A stretch of DNA of 63,229 bases, filler included, from Octopus bimaculoides (Eukaryota): NCBI RefSeq assembly GCF_001194135.2. It is 6 parts of 6 records of this genome, joined end to end, with 100 filler letters (N's around TTAATTAATTAA, not from the genome) between each part and the next. Parts side by side here need not be neighbours in the genome. Positions count along the whole stretch, not along the records: positions 1 to 16,785 come from NC_068986.1; 5 more parts are not named here. The stretch is one strand, 5' to 3'. A model generated the notes under the pieces. That model saw only the letters and a program-made list of their open reading frames with translations, searched no databases and was not told the origin of the DNA. The translations under genes and the position numbers were made by a program. This document shows positions 99 through 15,223 of this stretch, piece by piece; the stretch's first letter is position 1, and every line of letters starts with the position of its first letter.

Positions 99-346
99 CT
101 ATGATTTACATCCTAGAAAGATCTTGCTTACAGATCCATGTTGAAAAATTTGCGTTCTTGCAGATCTTAACGAAGATGCAAAAAAATTATTTCCGTGAAT
201 TATGTGCAGATAGTCTCTGTCAATAAACATAGAATCGATATCTCGAAGACTGGTTAGAAATCCGGTTGGTCTTGCATTGGAAATCAGTGAACAGCCTTGT
301 CTACGTAACCATTTCACACACCTTACTGCTTGGAGAACATTGGTTC
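99..346 (-). CDS. MMP terminal exon: end of hemopexin blade 3 and blade 4 (G-TNVLQAVRCVKW...RDIDSMFIDRDYLHIIHGNN...KIFLGCKS*)
   Basis: Acceptor ctcttcag|GA at 346, phase 1, matching the upstream donor. The exon is 248 nt (2+82 codons) and ends in TAG at 99-101. IDSMF...LHIIHG is a hemopexin blade motif and the terminal FLGC is the canonical closing Cys of MMP hemopexin domains. There is no TM or GPI tail. Confidence 0.85.
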
Positions 347-479
347 CTGAAGAGGGAGATAGATAAATAATTAACTAAGTTTACATATAAAGATGTCTAC
401 ACTAAGACATATGCACCTATACACTCAAATGCATACATATAGATTCACATATTCACACGCACGTACATACTTATACACC

Positions 480-1410
480 TACATACATATATCTTCATAC
501 AATTACATAATAAAATGTGATAGCCGATGCAGACTTTGTGGTGTTAACACCGAAAATATCACCCACATCATAAGCAGTTGTCTGAAAATGTCATTACGGT
601 AACATCTACCGTTGAGACATGATGTTGTAGCTAGGACACCGTTAACGAGACCCTGGAAAGGATAACCCCGAGGACAAAGAAATAAGAGCCCATAATACGG
701 TGGAAGATATAGCTACTTAAAATAAAATGGAGTGCTGGTAGAATGTCCCAGTGAAAATCTCGATAAAATGTAAAAGCCATAGAGTTGATATAATGATTTG
801 GGACAAAGAAGAGAAACTGTGTACAGTTGTGGAAACCAACTTCCCAGTGGATGTTAGCACAAAGCTGAAGATGAGTGAAAAAGAGAATATCTACGCTGAA
901 CTATTGAGAAATCTGAAGTTACCCTATCCAGATTACAAGTTCAGATGTATACCTATAATTATTGGGGCCCTGGGATATGTAGCACACTGCCTAAATACCA
1001 ATCATGAGAAATTAGGTTTCTCAAAACCAGAAAGGAGAATGCTGATTCGAAGACTACAGATCCAAGCCATCACTAGAACTGTAAAAATCTGTGAGACTTT
1101 CCAGAAGTTTATCATTTAAGTATATATGAGCATGTCTAGATATGCGACTATATGCATAAGAATACATACATAAAACAAAACATATAAATCTGCACATAAA
1201 CATACATACATACATACATACATACATACATACATACATACATACATACATGCATATATATACATACATACATACATACATACATACATACATACATACA
1301 TACATACATACATACATGCTGAAATTCCAATGAAGGAGCCCTGGATCTAGGTTAGAAACCGGGTCTTTCTCTATTGGCAAGAAATCTTGAAAGAAAACTG
1401 AATAATGACA
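480..1410 (+). mobile_element. 3' remnant of an R4/Dong/CRE-type non-LTR retrotransposon (CCHC knuckle + restriction-like endonuclease), with a (CATA)n tract in its 3' region
   Basis: Frameshifted translation CRLCGVNTENITHIISSC...RHDVVA, RVDIMIWDKEEKLCTVVE, EKENIYAELL, PIIIGALG, QIQAITRTVKICETF are typical REL-clade C-terminal motifs. It lies in the last MMP intron. Confidence 0.8.
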
Positions 1411-2471
1411 TACATATGTATTCACATATCAACACACATGTACATACATACGCTCATACATACATATATATTCATACAGTGACACACACGTACACACATA
1501 CATATATAAATATTCACACATTCACACGCACATACATACGTTCGCTCGAGCGCGTACGGACACACATACACACACACACACACACACATTGTTCACATCA
1601 TAAGAATTTAGAAACTTCGAAAGAACGTGAAATAACTTTTTAACTGTGGAACTCGAAGTAGATAAAGTTATCGATAATAACATGTATGTGTTGTGTTAAA
1701 TACACTTTGTATAGAAAAGTCGAAGACTGCACCTGAAGTTGCCGATTTAGTCGTCGACGACCCGATTATATGACAAGTTGTACTGGGTTACATGTTACAA
1801 GTACCACTGAAAAGCGCTCAATTTCATAAAAATGAGATTAGTATCATTAGCGTTGTGAATGTTTCTCATTCTTTCTTTAAATGTTTCTTATGCACGAAAG
1901 TATGCATGCCTGATGCTGGTATGAGATCGTACAAGCGTGCCCATGTGGTAATGCACACATGAACTATTGGAATTTCATTTAGAATGACCAGTTTCAATGT
2001 CATATTTGTCAAAATACCTGCAAATCCCGCAGAGGATTGAAGCGGTATTTGAACACGCGGAAAATGGAGTCAATGCTGAAATGCGACAATGCTGCAAAAA
2101 CATTCCATATCAATCCGACCAAATTTCAAAAAATCTTGCACGTGATCAACTCGGATTTGACTGAATTTATTGTACTTTTTAGGTAATACCTCTATATGCA
2201 TAAGGGCAACATAGATTCTCCTTCATATCTACTGGTAAAGACAAATAGAAATACTTGTATTGCCTACATATACCTTTTTTTCTGTCTCTTTTTATTAGAG
2301 AGGATATAATCAATCGAATTGGCCTTAATATCTTATAGATACTTATTTTATTGATTAGACGTCTACAAAATTCGATCTCACAATTATGAATCATTAAACT
2401 TTAAATGTCGGCTTTATCGTCGTTAACTAACCAGTTTAATGTCTTATAAGAATATCTAAACGAAATATTAC

Positions 2472-2628
2472 CGTTAAATAGATAAAGTGTTCTCCTCCTG
2501 GTGTGAATATAGGCCGCAGTTACCTGCCCTTGTAAGGCAATCCCAAATTCTTCGGTTATATTTCTAGGATAGCCTCGATCCAGGCAGAACCTACCACGAC
2601 ATTTCCGATACCTCCAAATACGGTCATC
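2472..2628 (-). CDS. MMP hemopexin exon (DDRIWRYRKCRGRFCLDRGYPRNITEEFGIALQGQVTAAYIHTRRRTLYLFNG)
   Basis: Acceptor ttttcag|GAT at 2628 and donor AACG|gtaat at 2472; 157 nt, phase 0 to phase 1. WRY...LDxGYPRxI and TAA...LYLFxG are hemopexin motifs. The exon is too short to appear in the ORF track. Confidence 0.9.
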
Positions 2629-2832
2629 CTGAAAAGAATGAACATATAAACAAGGTTTTTATGGGGCAGAAATTAAGTTACATCAGAAATATAGACAGGA
2701 ATAGAATAAAGTCGCATTCATCTCACCACCAAATTCAAAAGAATTAATATATCGTCTTTTAATAACCTATAAACTACTGCAATTAAAGGAGTTAACATAT
2801 CGCCCGTTAATGACCTGTGTATTTGATAATTA

Positions 2833-3410
2833 GGATCTATTTTAAAACGGGGGCCACATTTTTCATTAAGGTTTTACGTAGTGTTTTTGGTACGGAAAGA
2901 CTTTCAAACTTCGTATACTTATCTATTTTGTGTTATAGAACAGAAAAATATTTTTGTATTCGAATTTATTTCATGTAAAAAATTGTCTTATTTCGCTAAT
3001 TTCAACCAATCACTGACAAGTATTCAGTTGTTTACATTTACTTCTTTGGCTGATTAAGCGATGTAAAGCGTATTTAATCTCCATACCTTCGTTTTATTTG
3101 CTTTTTTCATTTTAAATTTGCTTTAACCCTAACCCTAACCCTAGGGTTAGGGTTAGGGTTAGGGTTAGGGTTAATTGTTTCAGAATCGTTTGTTTATGTA
3201 GTCGGCACTTAATGTATATCGGCTGAATGGACGTCAGTGATTGGTTGAAATTACAGAAATACAACTTTAACATGGAATAACTTATGGATTTCTTTTTTTT
3301 TTTAAGAAGACTAAGAGAGAAAGATGTTTTATATGACACATTCTACCAGTGTTCCAAGTTTCAAAGTGTTTCGTTAATGAAAAATGTGGCCCCCGTTTTA
3401 AAAAAGATCC
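2833..3410. mobile_element. Non-autonomous DNA transposon (MITE) with ~38-bp TIRs, 8-bp TSD and a central telomeric-repeat palindrome
   Basis: Left end ggatctattttaaaacgggggccacatttttcattaa; right end ttaatgaaaaatgtggcccccgttttaaaaaagatcc. The 8-mer gataatta occurs at 2825-2832 and 3411-3418. An inner inverted repeat atttcaaccaatcactgac / gtcagtgattggttgaaat is also present. Confidence 0.85.
3124..3173. repeat. Interstitial telomere-type repeat, head-to-head (TAACCC)3-TA-(GGGTTA)5
   Basis: Read directly from the sequence. Confidence 0.95.
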
Positions 3411-3487
3411 GATAATTATTAACTCACGTAAAATTAAATAAAATTATTCATTTCTATATTTAAGAGAAGAGGAATTATGTACATTAT

Positions 3488-3720
3488 TTACATTTGTCCT
3501 CATCTTGTTTGTTAACACGTTTCGGCTGATATACCCTCCATCAGGTGTCTTGGGGAAATTTCGAACCTGGGTTCGCATTCAGGTCACTGCCTGGAATCGA
3601 ACTCGGAATCTAGGGGTTTGTAGCCCGCGCTCTTAATCACTACGCCATATGTCCGTGGGCAATTATGGAGTGAATTTTAGGGCTTATAAATTTTATATTT
3701 TCCTATCCTTCCTTAATACT
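3488..3720 (-). mobile_element. tRNA-headed SINE-like repeat, inverted partner of 3790-4075
   Basis: The reverse complement matches the 3790-4075 copy; A-box/B-box-like ggcgtagtgattaagagc...gagttcgattcc. Confidence 0.75.
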
Positions 3721-3789
3721 GGTTCTCATATGCTATTCATGTCTGCACTCGGTCTACATTGGAGGTTGTTGTGTCCTAGCATATATGCT

Positions 3790-4075
3790 AGGTATTAAGG
3801 AAGGCTAGGAAAATATTAGATTTATAAGTCCTAAAATTCACTCCATCATTGTCCACGGGTATATGGCGCAGTGGTTAAGAGCGTGGGCTACTACCCTCAC
3901 GATTTTGAGTTCGATTCCAGGCAGTCACCTGAATAATAATAATAATTACATCAAAAAATACCTTAGGAATGAGAACCCATGTTCCAAATTTCTCCACGAC
4001 ACCTGATGGAGGGTATATCAGCTGAAACGTTGTGTTAACAACAAACAAAATGAGGACAAATATCCGTCAAATGAA
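3790..4075 (+). mobile_element. tRNA-headed SINE-like repeat with a Penelope-like hammerhead-type 3' segment
   Basis: ggcgcagtggttaagagcg...gagttcgattccagg (Pol III A/B boxes), followed by gacacctgatggagggtatatcagctgaaacgttgtgtt. Confidence 0.75.
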
Positions 4076-4399
4076 AATTATTCATGTATCTTCTTAATTT
4101 TTATCTCGGATTGAAATTTAAACAAATGTTTTGATAAGAATTCCAAAAATATTTTGACCATATTTTACTACTTAATCTTTTAGGAAGATTATTCTCCCTA
4201 TGGCAATCACAACAGCAAAATTAACAAATCCAGCGACTCAAATTATATGTAGCGGAAGTAGTATTAGATTAAAATAGCTGCTTTTGTATTATACTTATTA
4301 TGTTATAATATCACGATGTATTATACATCGTGATAGGCAAATTTACTGCAGCATTTGTGCGGTGAAAATATTTCTTGTGGCCGTACTGTGTTTACGAAC

Positions 4400-4605
4400 A
4401 AATACTTATTGGAGGGGTCGACTTGGCAGAATACTTGGCACGAAATTGGACGGATGAAATGCTTAACGGCATTTCATCCGTCTTTACGTTCTGTGTTCAA
4501 ATTCTGCCGAGGTCGACAAATTAAGTACCAGGGAAACACTGGGGTCAATCCAATCGACTATTCCTCTCCTCCAAAATGTCAGGCTTTGTGCCTTTAGTAG
4601 AAAGG
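4400..4605 (+). mobile_element. SINE family B copy (degenerate), followed by an (ATT)n tract
   Basis: Shares cttggcagaa...cgaaatgcttaacggcatttc...ttcaaattctgccgaggtcga...taagtaccag...aatcgact with the copies at 41350-42420 and 55192-55425. Confidence 0.7.
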
Positions 4606-4652
<47 letters not shown>

Positions 4653-4659
4653 CATTATT

Positions 4660-4911
4660 TGGATCCTAACTCATACGTCTTGGTCGTGGATCCTAGGAAA
4701 CGTCAAAGTAGGAGAACGCTTGGGAGGATGAAGTACGGATTGGCGTTCGGAGACCCTGAGCCGTTATGGTAGCCTTGAAGGCTTGTGAAGAACCTTGAAG
4801 CGGTAGGCTGAAGGAACTCTGGTATCATCCTTTGGGCTGGTGTCAAGACGATCCTCAAAAGATCTTGGTTTCGGCAACTCGGTGCAGCTCCATTGTTTAA
4901 GACCGCCTGTC
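4660..4911 (-). mobile_element. Probable 3' end of a non-LTR retroelement ending in an (AAT)n tail
   Basis: On the minus strand the sequence runs into (AAT)n. There is weak resemblance (DLLRIVLT) to the ILRKVL end motif of REL LINEs. It is truncated by a gap. Confidence 0.3.
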
Positions 4912-5489
4912 NNNNNNNNNNNNNNNNNNNNNNNNNNNNNNNNNNNNNNNNNNNNNNNNNNNNNNNNNNNNNNNNNNNNNNNNNNNNNNNNNNNNNNNNN
5001 NNNNNNNNNNNNNNNNNNNNNNNNNNNNNNNNNNNNNNNNNNNNNNNNNNNNNNNNNNNNNNNNNNNNNNNNNNNNNNNNNNNNNNNNNNNNNNNNNNNN
5101 NNNNNNNNNNNNNNNNNNNNNNNNNNNNNNNNNNNNNNNNNNNNNNNNNNNNNNNNNNNNNNNNNNNNNNNNNNNNNNNNNNNNNNNNNNNNNNNNNNNN
5201 NNNNNNNNNNNNNNNNNNNNNNNNNNNNNNNNNNNNNNNNNNNNNNNNNNNNNNNNNNNNNNNNNNNNNNNNNNNNNNNNNNNNNNNNNNNNNNNNNNNN
5301 NNNNNNNNNNNNNNNNNNNNNNNNNNNNNNNNNNNNNNNNNNNNNNNNNNNNNNNNNNNNNNNNNNNNNNNNNNNNNNNNNNNNNNNNNNNNNNNNNNNN
5401 NNNNNNNNNNNNNNNNNNNNNNNNNNNNNNNNNNNNNNNNNNNNNNNNNNNNNNNNNNNNNNNNNNNNNNNNNNNNNNNNNNNNNNNNN

Positions 5490-5647
5490 AAAAAGATAAG
5501 TTCGGGACCATTTCTTCTTCCTTCCAAACTCCATAGACACCGCTGCCGTAATATTTCCTGGATTTCTTGGAAACATTTCAGATATTGATGAAATATTTCT
5601 ATGCTTAGTTGGTAATCTGCACAACGAGAACCAATAAACCGTGTTTC
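5490..5647 (-). CDS. MMP hemopexin exon, blade 1 end/blade 2 (G-NTVYWFSLCRLPTKHRNISSISEMFPRNPGNITAAVSMEFGRKKKWSRTYLF...), 3' end lost in N gap
   Basis: Acceptor ctctctgtccag|GA at 5647, phase 1, matching the donor at 7040. ISEMFP..P.NITAA...TYLF is a hemopexin pattern. The donor falls inside the 4912-5489 gap. Confidence 0.85.
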
Positions 5648-5992
5648 CTGGACAGAGAGAGAAACAAAACCTGACTTTTCAGTAGAGGTGATATGTGTAT
5701 ACATACATGCATGCATACATACATACATACATACACATACATCCACACATACATACATACATACATACATACATACATACATACACACATACATGCATAC
5801 ACACACATACTTCCACACATACATGTATAAATACGTACATACACGCATACACACATACACACACATACATGCATCCACACACACATACATACATACATAC
5901 ATACATACATACTTCTACACACACATATATACATACATACAGACATACATACAGACATACATACGTACGTACATACATACATACATACAAGC

Positions 5993-6157
5993 TGCAGGCG
6001 TGGCTCTTTGGTAAGTAGTTTGCTTTCCACCCACATGGTTTCGGGTTCAGTCTCACATCGTAGCAAGTGTCTTTTTGGGCAAGTGTCTTCTACTATAACC
6101 TCGAGTCAACCAAAGCCCTGTGAGTGGATTTGGTAGACGAAAACTGAAAGAAGCTCG

Positions 6158-6201
<44 letters not shown>

Positions 6202-6397
6202 CTGCGTTTGTCCCCCACCACCTCTTGACAACCGGTGGTGGTGTGTTTATGTTCCCGTAAACTAGCGGTTCGGCAAAAGATACCGATGGAATAAGTACCA
6301 GGCTTCAAAAATAAGCACCGGAGTCGATTCGTTCGACTAAAGTTCCTCAAGGTGGTGCCCCAGGATAACCGAAGACTGAGACAAATAAAAAGTAAAA
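5993..6397 (+). mobile_element. SINE family A (tRNA head, CORE-like ttgggcaagtgtcttctac, internal (GT)n, tail)
   Basis: gcaggcgtggctctttggtaag...ggtttcgggttcagtc...ttgggcaagtgtcttctactata...caaagccctgtgagtggatttggtagacgaaaactgaaagaagc; the same family recurs at 16520, 18340, 19005, 22226 and 22388. Confidence 0.75.
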
Positions 6398-6490
6398 CAT
6401 ACACACATACACAATATACATACACACACACACACACACATATAGACACACACACATAGAGTATATATATATATATGTATACATATGGAC

Positions 6491-6800
6491 GTGGAGGCGC
6501 AATGGCCCAGTGGTTAGAGCAGCGAACTCGCGGTCGGAGGATCGAGGTTTCAATTCCCAGACCGGGCGTTGTGTGTGTTTATTGAGCGAAAATACCTAAG
6601 TTCTACGAGGTTCCGGCAGGTGGTGGTGGCGACCCCTGTTGTACTCTTTCGCCCCAACTTTCTCTCACTCTTTCTTCCTGTTTCTTGAGTAACGCTGCGA
6701 TGGACTGGTGTCCCGTCCAGCTGGGGGAAACACATACGCCATAGAAACCGAGAAACCGGGCCCATCAGCCTGGATAGGCTTTAAAAGGGCGCATAATAAA
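6491..6800 (+). mobile_element. tRNA-derived SINE family C
   Basis: gtggaggcgcaatggcccagtggttagagcagcg...gaggtttcaattccc (A/B boxes). The internal segment is the reverse complement of the tail at 50730-50825. Confidence 0.7.
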
Positions 6801-7039
6801 ATAATATGAATAATGTTGAACATTATATATTTGTAAAAGACAATTTGCTGTTGAAGAAGGGCCATCATTACACGAACAGGAATCGAACAACGAATTATGT
6901 AGGGTTTAAATCATACAAGAGAATCTCAGCTCTGTTGTTCGGTCTGCTAAGAATAATAGCCAAGAAAATTCGAGTCAGCTTACGAAATAAACAGATTACT
7001 TTATGACTTAATTATTTAATAAAAGATTACGTTACTCAC

Positions 7040-10000
7040 CACTAAATATATACAGAGTGCGACTCGGATCAACAAATGTAGCATCAATAGGTATGAAGCA
7101 TACATCGCTCGAATTTCTATTTTGTTGCGAAGATCGACCCATTGTGGTTGGCTGTGTAGAAAATGCTCTGTTGTGTGCTATTACATCAGATGGCTCTTGA
7201 GTTTGAAAGTCCCCTGGACGCATCGTTTGTCTTTTAGCAGGTTTATCACTCGTAGGTTGCCAAATATCCCTGATAGTTTGTCTTTGTTGAGTTTGATCTC
7301 GGTTTCTAGTCACAAACAGTGGTAATACAGTCGATGTTTTCGTTCCCGAGGATTTAAAACACCCAGTTACACCTGAAACAGTTGTCAGCGGAATTCGAAC
7401 GTCCATCGGTCCGGTTCGAAATTCACTTCCTGTATCGGGACCTAACGTATCCATTTCTGGATAACTGCGTTTGACCCGTTTAAAGAAGTCACGTTCGATT
7501 TTGTGTCGGTTTCCGCTCTCTAACAGAGTATTGAAGTTTCGCAAATGCCCCGTTTCCTTACCTATTTGAACGTGGGGCCACAGCTGTGGCTTATATTTGT
7601 TCTTTCGACGAAGCAGTTTGTACAACGTTCGTTTCCCACCCGAGACGGTGTTGTCGTTGTTGTTGTCGTTGTTATATTGTTGCATGTCTGCAATACGTTT
7701 TTGAGTGGTATGTGTTTCGTAGGAGCTCTTCAGTTGTACGCCTGGAACTGTGTGTCGATTATCAATAGTGAAAACTATCATATTTCGTTCGTTTGGTCCA
7801 TGACTGAAATTTGTGACGGAAGTTGTTCCGGGCGAATGTAACACATCAGGAGAGATTTTGACCTTAGAACTAATTTTTGTGGTGTTTGCAGAGTTTTTGA
7901 TATTATTGTCAGTGGAGCTGATGGAAGAGGTGCTCCTGGTGTTAGTGGTAGTGTTGCTTATATTGCTATCAGTTGTGTTATAAGGGCTGTTTTTAGTGTT
8001 AGCGGTAGTGTTGTTACGGGTCGTATTATTGGTGTTGCTATCGATGGAATTAATGTAGTTGTCGGTGTTGCTAATGTTGATATCGGTGCTGTTAACGACA
8101 CTATAATTAGTGTCAGTGGCAACGTTACTGGTGTTGCTATCGGTGGTGCCAATGAGGTTGTTTGTGTTGTTAACGTTGCTATCGGCGTTGTTAATGAGTT
8201 TGTTGCTGGTGTCACTGGTAGAGCTGATACTGATGGTTTTACTGGTTTTGCTATCGGTAATGACAGCATTTCTGATGTTGCTACCGGTGGTGCTAATGAG
8301 GTTGCTATTGGCGTTAGTAATATCAACAGTCGCGCTGTTGTTACTGTTGTTGCTATTGGTGGTGCTATTGAAATTATAAATGTTAGTGTTAGAGGTATTT
8401 ACGGACATGGTGCTATTACTGGTGTTCCTATGGTTAAAGACCCTGTTGGTATTAACAGGGCTCTTGGTTTTCATATCACTAGTAGCGTTAAGGACAATAT
8501 TTGTGACTGCAATGCTGATGGTGTCAGAGATGGTGGTGGTGGTGGTGGTGGAGTTAACAGCAAAAGTGGCAGCAGCAGTCGTAGTGGTGAAGTCGACAGG
8601 GAAAATGTTATCTGTTTCTTTTGAAACTTCAGTTCTTTTTGTTGTTGTAGTTGTTGTTGCTGTTGATGTTGTTGTATTCATTGGTGTTCTTGTTGTTCTT
8701 ACCATCGTGGCCATCGACGTCGTTTGACGCTTAGTCTGGGCTTCAGCGGATCGAACCCGCTCTGTTCGGTTTACAGTTTTTATGGCTGCTGTTCTGTCTA
8801 GCAGTGTCTGAGTTGTGATCCCAAGAGATATATGGCGGTTTTCTGAAGTTCTGTCTCGAACGGTAGACCTTCCAGGAAAATTGACATCTTGGGTGTCCAA
8901 GGAGGGAATCTGATTTGCAGCTTCCGGTGCTTTAGAGGGAACCGTTTGTAGGTTCGCATAAGTCTGGAATGTAGAAAGGTTTGGGCTAGGAGATGCGTAC
9001 GTTGAGGGCAAAAAGCCATAAATGGGTGGCTGATCTACAAACGTTGACTGTACCGGGGTGGCATATACACTACTAAATGGATGATCAGATTTTGGTGTGT
9101 TTAATGTTGTTGTCGTTGTTGGTGTTTGTGATGATGGTGATGATGGGGTTCGTTGTGGTGATGGTGGCGGTGATAACGGTAGAAATGACGGTGGTGGTGT
9201 TTGCGTTAATGAGGGTGATAGTATTTCTGGTGGTCGTCGTGGCGTTTGTGGTGGCGGCGGTGGTTGTTTTGATGGTGCTGGTGTTGATGGCGGTTGAGGT
9301 GGTGGTGATTGTGGCGGTGTTGATGGTGGTGGTGGTGATGGTGGTGGCGTTGGTAGTGGAGATGGTGATGGTGGTTGTGATGATGGAGCTGGTGGTCGTG
9401 TTTGTGGAGGTGGAGTTAGTTTTAGTGATGGGCGTGTTTCTGCTGGTGGTGGTGTTTGTGGAGGTGGAGTTAGTTTTAGTGATGGGCGTGTTTCTGCTGG
9501 TGGTGGTGTTTNNNNNNNNNNNNNNNNNNNNNNNNNNNNNNNNNNNNNNNNNNNNNNNNNNNNNNNNNNNNNNNNNNNNNNNNNNNNNNNNNNNNNNNNN
9601 NNNNNNNNNNNNNNNNNNNNNNNNNNNNNNNNNNNNNNNNNNNNNNNNNNNNNNNNNNNNNNNNNNNNNNNNNNNNNNNNNNNNNNNNNNNNNNNNNNNN
9701 NNNNNNNNNNNNNNNNNNNNNNNNNNNNNNNNNNNNNNNNNNNNNNNNNNNNNNNNNNNNNNNNNNNNNNNNNNNNNNNNNNNNNNNNNNNNNNNNNNNN
9801 NNNNNNNNNNNNNNNNNNNNNNNNNNNNNNNNNNNNNNNNNNNNNNNNNNNNNNNNNNNNNNNNNNNNNNNNNNNNNNNNNNNNNNNNNNNNNNNNNNNN
9901 NNNNNNNNNNNNNNNNNNNNNNNNNNNNNNNNNNNNNNNNNNNNNNNNNNNNTCTTCCCCCACAGCATCACGAACTTTCTTTGTGATCTGGGTCGAGTGG

Positions 10001-11270
10001 CCCAAAATAAGTTGTGTTGTCTTTGCCTTTACATTGCGTGTTGACCGAACAGTCGGTAAAGATGATGACGATGACGACGACGACGACGACGACGACGACG
10101 ATGATGATGATGATGATGATGATGGTGTCTCCCTTGCCAACAAATATCCAGTTGGCGTTTGGTTCCCTTCAAACAGTGTGGATGAGACATATTCCGTCGC
10201 TTGATCGTTCGACAAAGATGTTTGTGCCAGGCGTTCAGATCTTGCGGTCACATCCTGATTAGTGGCGGTCTCGGTTTCGAACGGTGCCGAATACACTGCA
10301 GTAGTTTCTGCTGCTGCTGCTGCTGTTGTTGTTGTTGTTTTTGTCGTTATAGATGGTGTTGTTATTGTTGCTGCTGTTCTCTTGGCAGTAATAGTAACAT
10401 TGTTACCCGTTCCTGTGGACTCTGGTCTCGTAGTCATGTTTAACGCGTCCCTAGTAGTTACGTTTGCTATACGTCTGGTCACGTGTGATGGTTTGGTCAA
10501 ATCTGTTGTTGGTTTGGTCACGTGTGTTGTTGGTTTGGTTACGTATGCTGTTCGTCTGGTCACGTGTGTTAATGGTCTAAATCTGTTAGTTTTAGAACTG
10601 ATCACATGTGTTGGTCTGGTTACATCTTTCGCTCGCCTCGTCACATGTGTTGTTCGTCTAGTCACGTGGTTTGCCTTTCTGGTTACATGTTCTGTTCGTC
10701 TGGTCACATGTGTTGTTAATGGTCTAGACTTATCTGTTTTACGGCTGGACACGTGTGTTGTTGGTCCGGTCACGTATGTTGTTGATCTGGTCACGTGTGC
10801 GGTTGATCTGGTCACGTGTGTTGTTGGTCTGGTTCCCTGCGTTTTTCGTCTAGTCAAGCGTAAGCGTACAGTGTGTCCTGTCACGTGTGGAGTTGATTGT
10901 TTGTCATTGTTTGTTTTAGGTCTAGCCACATGGGTTGTTGGTTTGGTCACGCGTGTTTTTCGTTCGATTCCGTGTGTTGATGCTCTCGTGGCCACGTGTG
11001 TTGATGCTCTTGCGGTCACATGTGCTGATGTTCCTCTGGTCACGTGTGTTGATGCTCCTCTGGTCACGTGTGTTATTACTTCTCTGGTCACATGTGTTGT
11101 GTCATGCGATACTGTTGGTGGCAGTGCAGTTGATGGTTGCGATGTCGCCGTCGAATTTGGTTTGTTTGGCAACGACGGGGATGACGGCAATGACGATGAT
11201 GAAGACGACGATGGCAAGGTCCGGAAGAAGAAAAAAGGACGTCTTGGAAATATTCCTCCTTTAGCGACAC
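7040..11270 (-). CDS. MMP giant linker exon (Ser/Thr/Pro/His/Asn-rich) plus the start of the hemopexin domain (DVCFIPIDATFVDPSRTLYIFSG)
   Basis: Acceptor aattaacag|GT at 11270 (phase 1, matching the exon at 11829) and donor AGTG|gtgagt at 7040. The frame is stop-free from 11270 to the gap (9512-9952) and from the gap to 7040. The frame offset across the gap is explained by the estimated gap length, but an intron inside the gap cannot be excluded. Confidence 0.8.
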
Positions 11271-11330
11271 CTGTTAATTTGAGGTAGGTAGACGTTAGCA
11301 GAGGTATGGAAAGTATCAGGCTACGTAAAT

Positions 11331-11372
<42 letters not shown>

Positions 11373-11723
11373 CACCACTACCACCACCACCACCACCACC
11401 ACCACNNNNNNNNNNNNNNNNNNNNNNNNNNNNNNNNNNNNNNNNNNNNNNNNNNNNNNNNNNNNNNNNNNNNNNNNNNNNNNNNNNNNNNNNNNNNNNN
11501 NNNNNNNNNNNNNNNNNNNNNNNNNNNNNNNNNNNNNNNNNNNNNNNNNNNNNNNNNNNNNNNNNNNNNNNNNNNNNNNNNNNNNNNNNNNNNNNNNNNN
11601 NNNNNNNNNNNNNNNNNNNNNNNNNNNNNNNNNNNNNNNNNNNNNNNNNNNNNNNNNNNNNNNNNNNNNNNNNNNNNNNNNNNNNCACTACTGCTACCAC
11701 CACCACCACCACCACCACCACTT

Positions 11724-11755
<32 letters not shown>

Positions 11756-11828
11756 GCAACTGCTGCTGCTGCTGCTGCTGCTGCTGCTAATTTTTTCCAC
11801 CCCGAAAGCATGAATGCATGTAACTCAC

Positions 11829-11978
11829 CATAAATCGTTTGGATGACAGCAATGTCAAATTTGGACAGGGTACAGTCTCCTTTCATCCATGGCCACATGA
11901 TAGACAGGGGCCATCGGGAATGCATCAGCCCAAGGCTGTGTCCAAATTCATGTACAGCAACGCAGTAGAGTTCAGCAT
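11829..11978 (-). CDS. MMP catalytic exon with zinc-binding motif and Met-turn (N-AELYCVAVHEFGHSLGLMHSRWPLSIMWPWMKGDCTLSKFDIAVIQTIYG)
   Basis: Acceptor cataag|AT at 11978 and donor TATG|gtgagt at 11829; 150 nt, phase 1 to 1. HExGHxxGxxH and SIMxP are intact, ending in IQxIYG. No ORF in the supplied track covers this exon in full. Confidence 0.95.
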
Positions 11979-12033
11979 CTTATGAAAGAAAGAAAGACAG
12001 AAAGAAACATAGATGAAAGTTATAGGTTTATGT

Positions 12034-12067
<34 letters not shown>

Positions 12068-12988
12068 CATAATTTGTCTCCACTTTGGAGTCTGTTTGAT
12101 TACAAATACATATATGCACACACACACATTCACAGTTACGTGCACGTGTGTAAGTGTTTTTGAAGGTGATAGCTTTTACTAGGCGCATACTTCTTTTTCC
12201 TGAGAATTATTCTGAAAAGATGCGTATATTCGTGTATTTACAAACACGTGCGTATGTGTATATGTATATGTGTATATATATGTATGTATGTATATATATA
12301 TATATATANNNNNNNNNNNNNNNNNNNNNNNNNNNNNNNNNNNNNNNNNNNNNNNNNNNNNNNNNNNNNNNNNNNNNNNNNNNNNNNNNNNNNNNNNNNN
12401 NNNNNNNNATATAGAGAGAGAGAGAGAGAGAGAGAGATATAGATATATATACATACATATATATATACACACACATACATACAAACAACGTTTGCTAAAC
12501 TCTGCTTCACAAAAAAATGTATGAGACATTTTGTAGTAGCCACTATTGACGACAAAGTTCAAAATACAGTAACGGTAGTACCAAAAGAACTAAAACTCTT
12601 GGCTTGCGTTGATTATGTTGACACGTTTCAACAATATTTCATTTGCTTCGTAGTGACACTTTAAGGTTTAAAATATCATTACACTGTCTCTAGCTCCATC
12701 AAATGAACTGTCTTTAGCACCAATGAAATGACCGAAACGAATTAGCAGTTGGTATTGTTTGGGATGTGGTTGAAACGAATCTGAATAACTAATGTTCTGT
12801 GTCACAGCGATTCTAGAGAAAGCCATGTTTCAAACAGGTCTGATTATATAGAAAGGAAAATGGCTATGCAGAGTCACCCTCTGCATAGCCATTCGACTTC
12901 TAAGAAATAGTATCTCAAATTCCGAAAACGCGCAGTCCTCAGTGATGAGACAGGGCTAATAGTAATTACAAAAACTGAACCGACTCAC

Positions 12989-13214
12989 TTCTGTTGATGA
13001 AATTTCTCGAACCCCAGTCTTCGTCCGCATCAAAGTGGGCATCACCTGATAGACCCGGTGAGTTGTCGTAGGGAAAGAACGCATGCGCCAGAATGCCACC
13101 ATTTCCATCAAATGGACTACCATCGCCATGTCTACCAGTGAGAAAATTCACTTCTATGTCAACCGGGCCGCGTCTCTTGCGAGTGAATGTCAACTGTGTG
13201 ACTCGTTCCCATGC
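12989..13214 (-). CDS. MMP catalytic exon (AWERVTQLTFTRKRRGPVDIEVNFLTGRHGDGSPFDGNGGILAHAFFPYDNSPGLSGDAHFDADEDWGSRNFINR)
   Basis: Acceptor aattag|GCA at 13214 and donor AGAA|gtgagt at 12989; 226 nt, phase 0 to 1. HGDGxPFDGxGGxLAHAF and GDAHFDxDExW are structural Zn/Ca motifs of the matrixin family. Confidence 0.97.
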
Positions 13215-14455
13215 CTAATTAATAAACGAGTATGAAATGAATAAAGAAAAAAAACGACAAACACAAAAAGCAATTACGAACAAACTTCATTATAAACAAC
13301 AAATAAGTTAGCAATATTAACATTAACAATGACAGCCACGCGAGGGCCAAGAAATAACAAACGTACTGTTCTCAAATTACATCTTAACGTTTTCATACGT
13401 GAAGGTACATTGGATGACATATCCTACACACACACACACACACACACACACANNNNNNNNNNNNNNNNNNNNNNNNNNNNNNNNNNNNNNNNNNNNNNNN
13501 NNNNNNNNNNNNNNNNNNNNNNNNNNNNNNNNNNNNNNNNNNNNNNNNNNNNNNNNNNNNNNNNNNNNNNNNNNNNNNNNNNNNNNNNNNNNNNNNNNNN
13601 NNNNNNNNNNNNNNNNNNNNNNNNNNNNNNNNNNNNNNNNNNNNNNNNNNNNNNNNNNNNNNNNNNNNNNNNNNNNNNNNNNNNNNNNNNNNNNNNNNNN
13701 NNNNNNNNNNNNNNNNNNNNNNNNNNNNNNNNNNNNNNNNNNNNNNNNNNNNNNNNNNNNNNNNNNNNNNNNNNNNNNNNNNNNNNNNNNNNNNNNNNNN
13801 NNNNNNNNNNNNNNNNNNNNNNNNNNNNNNNNNNNNNNNNNNNNNNNNNNNNNNNNNNNNNNNNNNNNNNNNNNNNNNNNNNNNNNNNNNNNNNNNNNNN
13901 NNNNNNNNNNNNNNNNNNNNNNNNNNNNNNNNNNNNNNNNNNNNNNNNNNNNNNNNNNNNNNNNNNNNNNNNNNNNNNNNNNNNNNNNNNNNNNNNNNNN
14001 NNNNNNNNNNNNNNNNNNNNNNNNNNNNNNNNNNNNNNNNNNNNNNNNNNNNNNNNNNNNNNNNNNNNNNNNNNNNNNNNNNNNNNNNNNNNNNNNNNNN
14101 NNNNNNNNNNNNNNNNNNNNNNNNNNNNNNNNNNNNNNNNNNNNNNNNNNNNNNNNNNNNNNNNNNNNNNNNNNNNNNNNNNNNNNNNNNNNNNNNNNNN
14201 NNNNNNNNNNNNNNNNNNNNNNNNNNNNNNNNNNNNNNNNNNNNNNNNNNNNNNNNNNNNNNNNNNNNNNNNNNNNNNNNNNNNNNNNNNNNNNNNNNNN
14301 NNNNNNNNNNNNNNNNNNNNNNNNNNNNNNNNNNNNNNAACAGGTAAAAAATTATAGAGATCACGAATGAGGATTAATTCGTATGCCATGGCAATAAGAG
14401 CAAGTCGGCGTTTATTTCTTCCTTCCTTCTTTCCTTACTACCTTCCTTCTTTCCT

Positions 14456-14498
<43 letters not shown>

Positions 14499-14593
14499 CA
14501 AACGGAGAGACAATCAGCTACAATTTCATCCTACACTCTTATCGAAACACAAAACCTTTTCAGTTTTAAATGGAAGGTAAAAATTTAACTCAC

Positions 14594-14694
14594 CCGTAAG
14601 GCAGCGGTTATCACATACTCCAGTTGATGTTTATTAGGATATTTCGGTGGAGTGTTGATGTTGTACGTCAAGTCTTTCTTATACCATTTTGATC
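14594..14694 (-). CDS. MMP first catalytic-domain exon (G-SKWYKKDLTYNINTPPKYPNKHQLEYVITAALR)
   Basis: Acceptor aatgtag|GA at 14694 and donor CGG|gtgagt at 14594; 101 nt, phase 1 to 0. KWxKxxLTYxI is the typical N-terminus of the MMP catalytic domain. Confidence 0.9.
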
Positions 14695-15223
14695 CTACAT
14701 TTTACCAAAAATCAAATAATAAAGCATAAATCATGTATGAATATATAAACACGTACATACATCCATCCATCCATACATACATACACACATACATACATAC
14801 ACAAACACACATACATACATACATACAGACATACATACATGTGTGTATGCGTCTGTGTGTGTGTGTGTTATGTGCGGCCGAAAGAGTATTAGTTCAAAAT
14901 AGCAGTCTGTGTATCATACATAAAGTATATACGTCGTCGGAAGCCTAATAAACCTAGCTATTTGTGTCGATGAAGTACTTCTTATAGACGTATAGTATTA
15001 AAAGGCACAGAATTATATTAGCATTAGACGAAAATTGGGCAGCTGCGATGCCAGTATTTCCAAATATGTATTTCTGACTTCGAGCTTCGCCAGTAGCAAG
15101 TAATCACTAGCAACCGCATGCCAAAGAGATGGTTTCTCGAGTCTAAAACTGTAGCTTATCAGACTTTCAACATGTGTATTCTTTAAGTATGGAATACAGA
15201 TTGATATATATATATATATATAT

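What the first reader, a model, noticed from the sequence alone, without database searches (positions are those of the whole stretch)
99..14694. Matrix metalloproteinase with a giant (>1,200 aa) modular mucin-like linker between catalytic and hemopexin domains
Seen: seven exons give an intact MMP catalytic domain and a complete four-blade hemopexin domain, with matching splice phases wherever a junction can be checked. Between them lie about 1,260 sequenced codons (~1,400 with the gap) in what appears to be a single 4.2-kb exon. Established: MMP hinges are usually tens of residues; the O-glycosylated linker of MMP-9 is ~60 aa and Drosophila Mmp2 has a hinge of a few hundred aa. Inference: this secreted enzyme (no TM/GPI tail) would carry its catalytic head on a very long glycosylated tether. 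The tether has ordered zones: His/Arg heptads, Thr/Ala and poly-Ser, Pro-rich, Asn/Thr-rich, then basic. It could act as a protease-mucin/ECM structural hybrid. Whether this architecture is already described for cephalopods cannot be checked here.
Basis: partly seen in the sequence, partly recalled or inferred. Interest (0 to 1): 0.78.

Follow-up and report, generated by a model that had tools for sequence, protein, structure and literature searches.

The report
Octopus metalloproteinase with giant disordered hinge
This is a real octopus matrix metalloproteinase gene in which one exon encodes a disordered hinge of about 1,400-1,550 residues, some twenty times longer than in any human MMP, and public annotations split and misname it.

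Summary
On the minus strand, seven exons (14694-14594, 13214-12989, 11978-11829, 11270-7040, 5647-5490, 2628-2472, 346-99) encode a full Peptidase_M10 catalytic domain. They also encode a four-blade hemopexin domain ending LGCKS*. All checkable splice phases match.

Exon 4 holds 1,241 sequenced linker codons. With the nominal 441-N gap (9512-9952) the frames on its two sides do not join. Gap-free orthologous loci of Octopus vulgaris and O. sinensis carry one uninterrupted exon of 4,698 and 4,521 nt, giving linkers of 1,545 and 1,486 aa. The mismatch is therefore best explained by a wrong gap length.

The reading frame is under selection:
- There are 0 stops, against 30-116 in the other five frames.
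- 22 of 23 indels are multiples of three.
- Linker dN/dS is 0.60, against 0.09 for the folded domains.
- A fourth, more distant octopod keeps 543 open codons.

A RefSeq model uses exactly my exon 4-7 junctions but starts inside exon 4. It is named "hybrid signal transduction histidine kinase M-like".

Still inferred rather than shown: glycosylation, secretion, tissue of expression, and a full-length transcript. The hinge has no detectable homologue outside octopods.

Verdict: a new variant of a known kind, of moderate to high interest.

The parts
14594..14694 (-). Exon 1 of the piece. It is the start of the mature catalytic domain (G)SKWYKKDLTYNINTPP...AALR, phase-1 acceptor, phase-0 donor.
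   Evidence: Pfam M10 match begins here
12989..13214 (-). Exon 2. It is the catalytic-domain core with the structural Zn/Ca ligands (GRHGDGSPFDGNGGILAHAF...GDAHFDADEDW).
   Evidence: alignment to MMP-1; 100% amino-acid identity to O. vulgaris
11829..11978 (-). Exon 3. It carries the zinc-binding motif HEFGHSLGLMH (11952-11920) and the Met-turn SIMWP (11904-11890), and ends ...QTIYG.
   Evidence: 100% nucleotide identity to O. vulgaris
11271..11828 (-). Intron 3, made almost wholly of a GCN/GTN triplet array, and holding gap 11406-11685. Its length differs modulo 3 between species, as expected of an intron.
7040..11270 (-). Giant exon 4 (phase 1 to phase 1). It encodes the whole hinge plus the first strands of hemopexin blade 1, and is interrupted by assembly gap 9512-9952.
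   Evidence: Orthologous exon is 4,698 nt in O. vulgaris (L001 6030-10727) and 4,521 nt in O. sinensis (L002 7236-11756), both without stops.
10453..11109 (-). Hinge zone 2: T-H-V-T-R-type heptad/octad repeats. pI is about 12, with 10% His and 20% Arg+Lys. Length is 219 aa here against about 372 aa in O. vulgaris and 272 aa in O. sinensis.
   Evidence: (21-nt period, 17 copies)
9953..10452 (-). Hinge zone 3: Thr/Ala-rich, with an acidic patch and a run of 21 Ser.
9512..9952 (-). Assembly gap inside exon 4. The nominal length of 441 breaks the frame, and the true length must be 2 mod 3. O. vulgaris has about 130 Pro/Ser-rich codons here.
   Evidence: a 54-nt tandem repeat at 9388-9511 abuts the gap
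9087..9511 (-). Hinge zone 4: Pro-rich PTS-type segment (42% Pro, 30% Ser+Thr).
7860..8480 (-). Hinge zone 6: Asn/Thr/Ser-rich (25% Asn) with 19 N-x-S/T sequons. It aligns residue by residue with a distant octopod.
7101..7859 (-). Hinge zone 7: non-repetitive, basic (pI 10.2), and the best-conserved part of the hinge (dN/dS 0.31-0.42).
7467..7478 (-). R-V-K-R|S, the only R-x-[KR]-R motif in the hinge, 126 residues before the hemopexin Cys. It is kept in all four octopods.
7040..7100 (-). Start of the hemopexin domain: first Cys and blade 1 (CFIPIDATFVDPSRTLYIFSG).
5490..5647 (-). Exon 5: rest of blade 1 and first half of blade 2. Its last codon (Gln in the orthologues) and its donor are hidden in gap 4912-5489.
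2472..2628 (-). Exon 6: second half of blade 2 and first half of blade 3 (DDRIWRY...TLYLFNG).
99..346 (-). Exon 7: rest of blade 3, blade 4, the last Cys (110-108) and the stop codon (101-99). There is no TM or GPI tail.

Best explanation
**Shown.** The piece holds most of one octopod gene for a matrix metalloproteinase (matrixin, M10A). Its signal, propeptide and cysteine-switch exons lie just outside the piece. The ordinary hinge exon has grown to 4.2-4.7 kb. It encodes a basic, low-complexity linker of about 1,400-1,550 residues, rich in Ser, Thr, Pro and Asn, between an apparently active catalytic domain and a four-blade hemopexin domain. The exon is read in one frame over its whole length, because selection has kept it free of stops and frameshifts in four species. 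Its sequence and repeat number nonetheless drift quickly.

**Inferred.**
- The protein is secreted.
- The hinge is natively unfolded and heavily O- and N-glycosylated.
- The hinge works through length, charge and glycan load rather than exact sequence. It would hold the catalytic head on a tether of order 0.3-0.5 micrometres from whatever the hemopexin domain binds. My estimate assumes 0.25-0.35 nm per residue. Alternatively, its strongly basic His/Arg repeats fix the enzyme to polyanionic matrix or mucus.
- The conserved R-V-K-R|S site in the best-conserved hinge zone suggests a furin-type convertase can sever the hemopexin end from the catalytic-plus-hinge part.
For: **Domains.** Peptidase_M10 matches profile positions 1-159 of 159, E=7e-47. 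Identity to the MMP-1/3/12 catalytic domains is about 45%, with HEFGHSLGLMH and the Met-turn intact. Hemopexin scores 41.9 bits and hits the MMP-12 hemopexin domain at E=7e-10. The first and last Cys are present.

**One exon, one frame.**
- The ORFs of 1,565 and 1,506 codons in O. vulgaris and O. sinensis contain no N.
- There are 0 stops against 30-116 in the other frames and about 67 in shuffles.
- A neutral simulation at 8% divergence gives 12 +/- 3 stops, and none of 500 runs was stop-free.
- 22 of 23 indels are multiples of 3, against 4 of 13 in the introns.

**Selection.** Linker dN/dS is 0.60 (dS 0.127), against 0.09 for the folded domains. O. vulgaris versus O. sinensis gives 0.43. A fourth octopod at dS 0.42 gives 0.46 with 543 open codons.

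**Splicing.** RefSeq XP_036359593.1 uses my E4/E5, E5/E6 and E6/E7 junctions. The upstream O. sinensis model (754 aa) ends inside exon 4, in the correct frame and without a stop. Its size leaves about 100 residues for signal plus propeptide. A PRRRCGVPD cysteine-switch exon lies upstream.

**Composition and the RVKR site:**
Against: - No transcript or protein evidence spans the whole exon. Every public model I could see is fragmentary, and about 1.3 kb in the middle of the exon is unannotated in O. sinensis.
- In the window itself the frames on the two sides of gap 9512-9952 do not join at the nominal gap length.
- Glycosylation, disorder and secretion are not demonstrated.
- Both AlphaFold runs were uninformative. 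pLDDT was below 50 everywhere, including the hemopexin domain, so low confidence cannot be read as disorder.
- Overall Ser+Thr content (32%) is below that of classical mucin domains.
- Tissue of expression and substrates are unknown.
Confidence: 0.78

Rival explanations
1. There are two separate genes, as current annotations imply. One is a hemopexin-less MMP with a low-complexity tail. The other is an independent Asn/Thr-rich protein with a C-terminal hemopexin domain, transcribed from a start inside the 'exon'.
For: O. sinensis RefSeq has two models (754 aa and 773 aa) and O. vulgaris has three (707, 220 on the opposite strand, 244 aa). The 773-aa model starts at an internal Met.
Against: - The upstream O. 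sinensis model stops at L002 8716 in the open frame without a stop codon, so it is 3'-partial.
- The 1.3 kb between the two models is open in the same frame in all species.
- The frame is kept by in-frame indels and dN/dS below 1 on both sides of the internal Met.
- A product starting at that Met would have no signal peptide, yet it carries an extracellular disulfide-closed propeller.
- The O. vulgaris 244-aa model ends by read-through into the intron (IFSGE*), so it looks like an ORF call on a fragment.
Confidence: 0.06
2. The exon is real, but the main mRNA removes a large internal part of it (an exitron or alternative 3' acceptor). The abundant enzyme would then have an ordinary short hinge, and the giant form would be a minor isoform.
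For: Long low-complexity exons often hold cryptic splice sites. The O. vulgaris 707-aa model ends in another frame at L001 8934, so its builders inferred at least one internal intron. No full-length transcript is on record.
Against: Every 150-codon window of the exon is free of stops and frameshifts in three to four species. That requires translation of all parts in some isoform that matters for fitness. Both RefSeq models read long stretches of the exon unspliced.
Confidence: 0.12
3. The linker is a decaying or neutral microsatellite-type expansion, or an assembly artefact, with no function of its own.
For: - Linker nucleotide identity to O. vulgaris (91-93%) is close to that of the introns (77-92%).
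- Some windows have dN/dS at or above 1.
- Repeat numbers differ even between O. vulgaris and O. sinensis.
- Gaps sit at repeats.
Against: - The same architecture appears in three independent assemblies plus short-read contigs from three sequencing runs.
- No stop occurs where about 12 are expected under neutrality.
- Indels are in-frame.
- dN/dS is 0.46 at dS 0.42 against the distant species, with residue-level alignment even in the Asn-rich zone.
Confidence: 0.03
4. This is a rival on mechanism only. The giant polypeptide is a precursor, not a tether. It is cut at R-V-K-R|S in the secretory pathway, so the catalytic-plus-hinge part and a small hemopexin protein act separately.
For: The hinge has a single R-x-[KR]-R motif. 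It is kept in all four octopods and sits in the most constrained hinge zone. Furin-type motifs are used elsewhere in MMPs and ADAMTSs (established knowledge; PMC4448532 for ADAMTS processing).
Against: A four-residue motif in a basic region (15% Arg+Lys) can be conserved or arise without being used. No cleavage data exist.
Confidence: 0.3

Closest known systems
Human MMP-9 (gelatinase B), with its O-glycosylated (OG) linker
   Same: A secreted matrixin whose catalytic and hemopexin domains are joined by a flexible, Pro/Ser/Thr-rich, glycosylated hinge.
   Different: Human MMP linkers are 14-69 aa (PMC7290392), whereas this hinge is about 1,400-1,550 aa. There are no fibronectin type II inserts here. 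This hinge is strongly basic, zoned, and includes His/Arg heptads and an Asn-rich N-glycosylation zone.
Drosophila Mmp2
   Same: An invertebrate matrixin with an unusually long hinge. R477 is still in the hinge of a protein of about 730 aa (PMC5353688). From memory, the hinge insertion is about 200 aa.
   Different: The Drosophila hinge is roughly seven times shorter. Mmp2 is GPI-anchored, whereas this protein ends two residues after the last hemopexin Cys.
ADAMTS7 / ADAMTS12
   Same: Secreted metzincin proteases with an interposed mucin/proteoglycan domain that affects localisation and furin processing (PMC4448532).
   Different: They belong to a different family (M12B reprolysin-type, with TSR modules). 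Their mucin domain lies between ancillary repeats, not between catalytic and hemopexin domains, and it is much shorter.
RefSeq XP_036359593.1 'hybrid signal transduction histidine kinase M-like' (O. sinensis) and CAI9724839.1 (O. vulgaris)
   Same: They are fragments of the orthologous gene. The RefSeq model covers the last 558 hinge codons plus the hemopexin domain, and the O. vulgaris model covers the last 244 codons of exon 4.
   Different: They are annotated as separate genes. The name comes from Asn/Thr low complexity, not from any kinase domain. Neither is linked to the MMP catalytic domain.

Membership tests
Matrixin (MMP, MEROPS M10A) | Catalytic domain with the HExxHxxGxxH zinc site and a Met-turn | tested here: met
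   HEFGHSLGLMH at 11952-11920 and SIMWP at 11904-11890. Pfam PF00413 matches positions 1-159 of 159, E=7e-47.
Matrixin (MMP, MEROPS M10A) | Structural zinc and calcium ligands (HGD...DG.GG.LAHAF...GDAHFD) | tested here: met
   These residues align with MMP-1 3shi_A across the motif.
Matrixin (MMP, MEROPS M10A) | Propeptide with the cysteine switch PRCGxPD | not testable with these tools
   It is not in the piece. The O. sinensis orthologue has PRRRCGVPD in an exon that maps about 450 nt beyond the piece edge.
Matrixin (MMP, MEROPS M10A) | Signal peptide for secretion | not testable with these tools
   The first exon(s) lie outside both the piece and L002. The only hint is the size of the 754-aa O. 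sinensis model, which leaves about 100 residues ahead of the catalytic domain.
Matrixin (MMP, MEROPS M10A) | C-terminal four-blade hemopexin propeller closed by a Cys-Cys bond | tested here: met
   PF00045 scores 41.9 bits with two stretches. PDB hits include the MMP-12, MMP-13 and MMP-1 hemopexin domains. Four blade motifs can be read by eye, and the first Cys (7100) and last Cys (110) are present. The fold prediction failed.
Mucin-domain (PTS) proteins | Long Pro/Thr/Ser-rich, often tandemly repeated region | tested here: inconclusive
   Overall content is 32% Ser+Thr and 9-11% Pro. Only zone 4 (42% Pro, 30% Ser+Thr) is classical PTS. Other zones are His/Arg heptads, Asn-rich or non-repetitive.
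Mucin-domain (PTS) proteins | Dense O-glycosylation | not testable with these tools
   This needs glycoproteomics or lectin/PAS staining of the protein.
Hybrid signal transduction histidine kinase (the RefSeq name of the orthologous fragment) | Histidine kinase, ATPase or receiver domains | tested here: not met
   Pfam finds no such domain in the 825- and 438-aa hinge pieces or in zone 7. The precomputed Pfam record for the RefSeq model lists only Hemopexin.

The most novel reading that the evidence does not exclude
Octopods have turned an MMP hinge into a module of about 1,500 residues that works as a material rather than a spacer. It would be a polycationic, His/Arg-repeat plus glycan brush that embeds an active protease in mucus, egg coat or another extracellular material. 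A conserved convertase site would release the hemopexin end on demand. This would be a lineage-specific protease-mucin hybrid with no counterpart among described MMPs.
Probability: 0.3. Interest if true: 0.7.

Novelty: new variant of a known kind. Interest (0 to 1): 0.55.

Why it matters
In MMPs, hinge length and flexibility set how the catalytic and hemopexin domains cooperate on large substrates. Human hinges span 14-69 residues, and the longest invertebrate case I know of has a few hundred. A conserved hinge of about 1,500 residues is an extreme natural experiment on that relationship. It suggests a way of localising a protease, by a long tether or by embedding it in matrix or mucus, that has not been described for this family.

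There is also a practical point. The gene is split and misnamed in the two chromosome-scale octopus annotations I could inspect. Gene-family counts and expression studies in cephalopods therefore currently miss it, or count it as two or three unrelated genes.

Tried and rejected
- **Catalytic-domain homologue search.** It returned only short, mostly vertebrate MMP fragments plus one identical fragment (P0001). No cephalopod orthologue appeared, so it was useless for comparing linker lengths.
- **Full-length 1,609-aa query.** It returned only multi-catalytic fusion models and not even the known O. vulgaris fragment. This wasted the last search of that kind.
- **P0001.** It is not on record in the contig index.
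- **Spliced catalytic+hemopexin query.** I searched the 823-aa lower exon piece instead. It found a single relative among 1.84 billion representatives.
- **Pfam on the hinge pieces and zone 7.** No domain was found. The weak SR-25 hit is a composition artefact.
- **AlphaFold.** I ran zone 7 with a two-sequence alignment and the 773-aa O. sinensis model as a single sequence. Both gave pLDDT below 50 throughout, including the hemopexin domain. They are uninformative for or against disorder, so I did not run a fold search.
- **Literature searches.** Searches for octopus or cephalopod MMPs, mucin-like MMP hinges and the RefSeq name found no description of this architecture. The SRA run numbers of the fourth octopod could not be tied to a species.
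- **Donor after ...KTLNW for exon 6.** I considered it and rejected it, because the GT shifts by one base between species. The conserved GTAATA donor after LYLFN-G fits the phase and the RefSeq model.

Full report
**1. What is in the window.**

The gene lies on the minus strand. Stop-free segments and splice-site inspection give seven exons: E1 14694-14594, E2 13214-12989, E3 11978-11829, E4 11270-7040, E5 5647-5490 (running into gap 4912-5489), E6 2628-2472 and E7 346-99. Every acceptor is AG, and the donors are GTGAGT (GTAATA for E6). Phases agree at E1/E2 (0), E2/E3 (1), E3/E4 (1), E4/E5 (1) and E6/E7 (1).

E1-E3 translate to 160 residues that match Pfam Peptidase_M10 over the whole profile, positions 1-159 of 159, E=7e-47. 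They are about 45% identical to the catalytic domains of MMP-1, -3, -8, -12 and -13. The zinc site HEFGHSLGLMH, the Met-turn SIMWP and the structural-metal ligands are all present.

The end of E4 plus E5-E7 give a 208-residue domain running from CFIPID... to ...FLGCKS*. It scores 41.9 bits for Pfam Hemopexin and hits the hemopexin domains of MMP-12, MMP-13, MMP-1, MMP-2, hemopexin and vitronectin. Four blade motifs are readable: IDATF..LYIFSGNTVYW, ITAAV..TYLFQDDRIWRY, VTAAY..LYLFNGTNVLQ and IDSMF..HIIHGNNFF. The protein ends two residues after the last Cys, so there is no TM or GPI tail.

No propeptide or signal exon is in the piece.

**2. The gap test.**

Upstream of gap 9512-9952 the open frame (11268-9955, 438 codons) differs from the frame that is open downstream (9509-7041, 823 codons). 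With the nominal 441 N, exon 4 would be 4,231 nt, which is 1 mod 3. A phase-1-to-phase-1 exon must be 0 mod 3. The window alone therefore cannot show continuity. The true gap must be 2 mod 3.

A 54-nt tandem repeat (2.3 copies, 98% matches) abuts the gap at 9388-9511. It is a likely cause of the assembly break.

**3. Orthologous loci settle the question.**

A search with the hinge tail found one protein, an O. vulgaris 'hypothetical' of 244 aa (P0121). Its locus is L001 (OX597819.1, 20.7 kb, no N). L001 is collinear with the window at 80-94% nucleotide identity. It carries a single ORF of 1,585 codons from just before the exon-4 acceptor to LYIFSGE. The exon itself is L001 6030-10727, which is 4,698 nt with 1,565 full codons and no stop.

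The 90% cluster of P0121 also holds RefSeq XP_036359593.1 from O. sinensis (P0144, 773 aa). Its locus L002 (CM016864.1, no N) has the same exon at 7236-11756, which is 4,521 nt with 1,506 codons and no stop.

Linker length to the first hemopexin Cys is 1,545 aa in O. vulgaris and 1,486 aa in O. sinensis. In the window it is 1,241 aa sequenced, plus whatever the gap hides. O. vulgaris has about 130 Pro/Ser-rich residues at that position.

**4. Is the frame kept by selection?**

- The O. vulgaris exon has 0 stops in frame, against 77, 101, 95, 116 and 30 in the other five frames. Shuffles give about 67.
- Window and O. vulgaris differ by dS 0.127 and dN 0.077, so omega is 0.60 over 1,234 codons. 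The non-repetitive last 240 codons give 0.31-0.42. Two 150-codon windows are at or above 1.
- The folded domains give omega 0.09 at a similar dS of 0.143.
- Twenty-two of 23 indels in the exon are multiples of three. The single 1-nt exception is an out-of-register start of the alignment in the Pro repeat. In the introns only 4 of 13 indels are multiples of three.
- Random substitution of the exon at 8% gives 12 +/- 3 in-frame stops, and no stop-free case in 500 runs.
- O. vulgaris versus O. sinensis gives omega 0.43.
- The one hit of an exhaustive scan of 1.84 billion representatives (P0145) comes from short-read contigs of a more distant octopod (SRR11869384, SRR11869390 and SRR11869391). In contig L003 the frame is open for 543 codons up to the same GTGAGT donor. 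Against the window it shows dS 0.42, omega 0.46 and 67% amino-acid identity, and it aligns residue by residue even in the Asn-rich zone.

The whole exon is therefore translated in at least one isoform that matters for fitness. It is under weak purifying selection on sequence and strong selection on frame.

**5. Independent support for the gene model.**

XP_036359593.1 reads ...LYIFSG|NTVYW......TYLFQ|GDRVWRY... and ...LYLFNG|TNVLQ..., ending LGCKS. These are the junctions I derived.

The O. sinensis model upstream (754 aa) ends at L002 8716 on a CCA codon of the open frame, with no stop, so it is 3'-partial. Its length fits about 100 N-terminal residues, plus 160 catalytic residues, plus 493 hinge codons. 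An exon encoding PRRRCGVPD, the cysteine switch, lies at about L002 1166-1290. By alignment this is roughly 450 nt beyond the window's edge.

The O. vulgaris annotation breaks the locus into three pieces: a 707-aa model, a 220-aa model on the opposite strand inside the Asn-rich zone, and the 244-aa fragment. No database entry that I could reach shows the protein whole. The name 'hybrid signal transduction histidine kinase M-like' has no domain support.

**6. Anatomy of the hinge.**

| Zone | Window coordinates | Character |
|---|---|---|
| 1 | 11270-11110 | Ser/Pro-rich |
| 2 | 11109-10453 | T-H-V-T-R-type repeats, commonest spacing 7-8 residues, pI about 12, 10% His, 20% Arg+Lys; 219 aa here, about 372 in O. 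vulgaris, 272 in O. sinensis |
| 3 | 10452-9953 | Thr/Ala-rich, acidic patch, run of 21 Ser |
| 4 | gap to 9087 | 42% Pro, 30% Ser+Thr |
| 5 | 9086-8481 | mixed |
| 6 | 8480-7860 | 25% Asn, 19 N-x-S/T sequons |
| 7 | 7859-7101 | non-repetitive, pI 10.2, lowest omega |

Over the whole hinge, Ser+Thr is 32% and Pro 9-11%, with 31 N-x-S/T sequons and two Cys. The only R-x-[KR]-R motif is RVKR|S at 7478-7467. It is conserved in all four species.

**7. How it most likely works.**

*Shown.* This is one gene, with an intact active-site signature, a hemopexin propeller signature, and a giant hinge that is conserved in frame but fast-evolving.

*Inferred.* The protein is secreted as a zymogen, and the hinge is unfolded and glycosylated. 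Selection acts on length, charge and glycan-acceptor density rather than on exact sequence. That pattern fits a tether or brush. Such a hinge would let the catalytic head range a few hundred nanometres from the hemopexin anchor. My estimate assumes 0.25-0.35 nm per residue. Alternatively, it pins the enzyme to polyanionic matrix or mucus through the basic His/Arg repeats. The RVKR site may allow convertase cleavage that uncouples the two ends.

*Unknown.* Tissue of expression, substrates and glycosylation are all unknown.

**8. Comparison and novelty.**

Human MMP linkers are 14-69 aa (PMC7290392). The Drosophila Mmp2 hinge extends past residue 477 of a protein of about 730 aa (PMC5353688). 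ADAMTS7 and ADAMTS12 show that metzincins can carry mucin/proteoglycan modules that affect localisation and furin processing (PMC4448532), but in a different family and position.

Literature searches found no description of an MMP with a hinge of this size, and none of cephalopod MMP architecture. The hinge sequence has no detectable relative outside octopods. I could not measure hinge lengths in squid or other molluscs.

I rate this a new variant of a known kind.

**9. Failures.**

- Two of the three homologue searches were unproductive.
- Both structure predictions were uninformative.
- The species of the window was not established. It is an Octopus about 8-9% diverged from O. vulgaris. A UniParc fragment identical to E1+E2 exists (UPI000695863D).

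Noticed in passing
window 11271-11828 (holds gap 11406-11685); L001 5449-6029: Intron 3 is almost entirely a GCN/GTN triplet array. In O. vulgaris it stays open in the exon-3 frame for about 178 codons of poly-Ala/Val before a stop. Intron retention would therefore add a long hydrophobic tail to a hemopexin-less enzyme.
   Followed up: partly
window 9388-9511: A 54-nt tandem repeat (2.3 copies, 98% matches) encodes the duplicated unit TPPPAETRPSLKLTPPPQ directly below gap 9512-9952. O. vulgaris has one copy. It is probably why the assembly broke here.
   Followed up: partly
L001 about 2182-4747 (O. vulgaris intron 2); window gap 12309-12408: The O. vulgaris intron between exons 2 and 3 holds five tandem copies of a 534-nt unit and is about 4.9 kb long. 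The window's intron is about 1 kb with a 100-N gap. The satellite is either species-specific or collapsed in this assembly.
   Followed up: no
window 751-1119 (+ strand): A 122-aa ORF (GTG start) lies on the opposite strand inside intron 6. It has no Pfam match. The region is shared with O. vulgaris at 89% nucleotide identity. It may be an old mobile-element fragment, but I did not classify it.
   Followed up: partly
window about 1150-1350, 5700-6050, 14710-14900: Long (TGTA/TGCA)-type microsatellites in three introns give spurious 'CMYVCMYV' ORFs in several frames and cross-match each other.
   Followed up: no
L001 9116-9778 (minus strand): The O. vulgaris annotation carries a 220-aa gene on the strand opposite the Asn/Thr-rich hinge zone. 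That frame has few stops only because of the biased composition, so the model is almost certainly spurious.
   Followed up: partly
L002 about 1166-1290: In the O. sinensis propeptide exon, the cysteine switch PRRRCGVPD is followed by ...VRLGKR|SLYW. This is a dibasic site just ahead of the mature N-terminus and may be the activation cleavage site.
   Followed up: no
L001 6030-10727; L002 7236-11756: Exon 4 is phase 1 to phase 1 and a multiple of three in both gap-free species, so skipping it would keep the frame. Skipping would, however, delete the first hemopexin Cys and half of blade 1.
   Followed up: no
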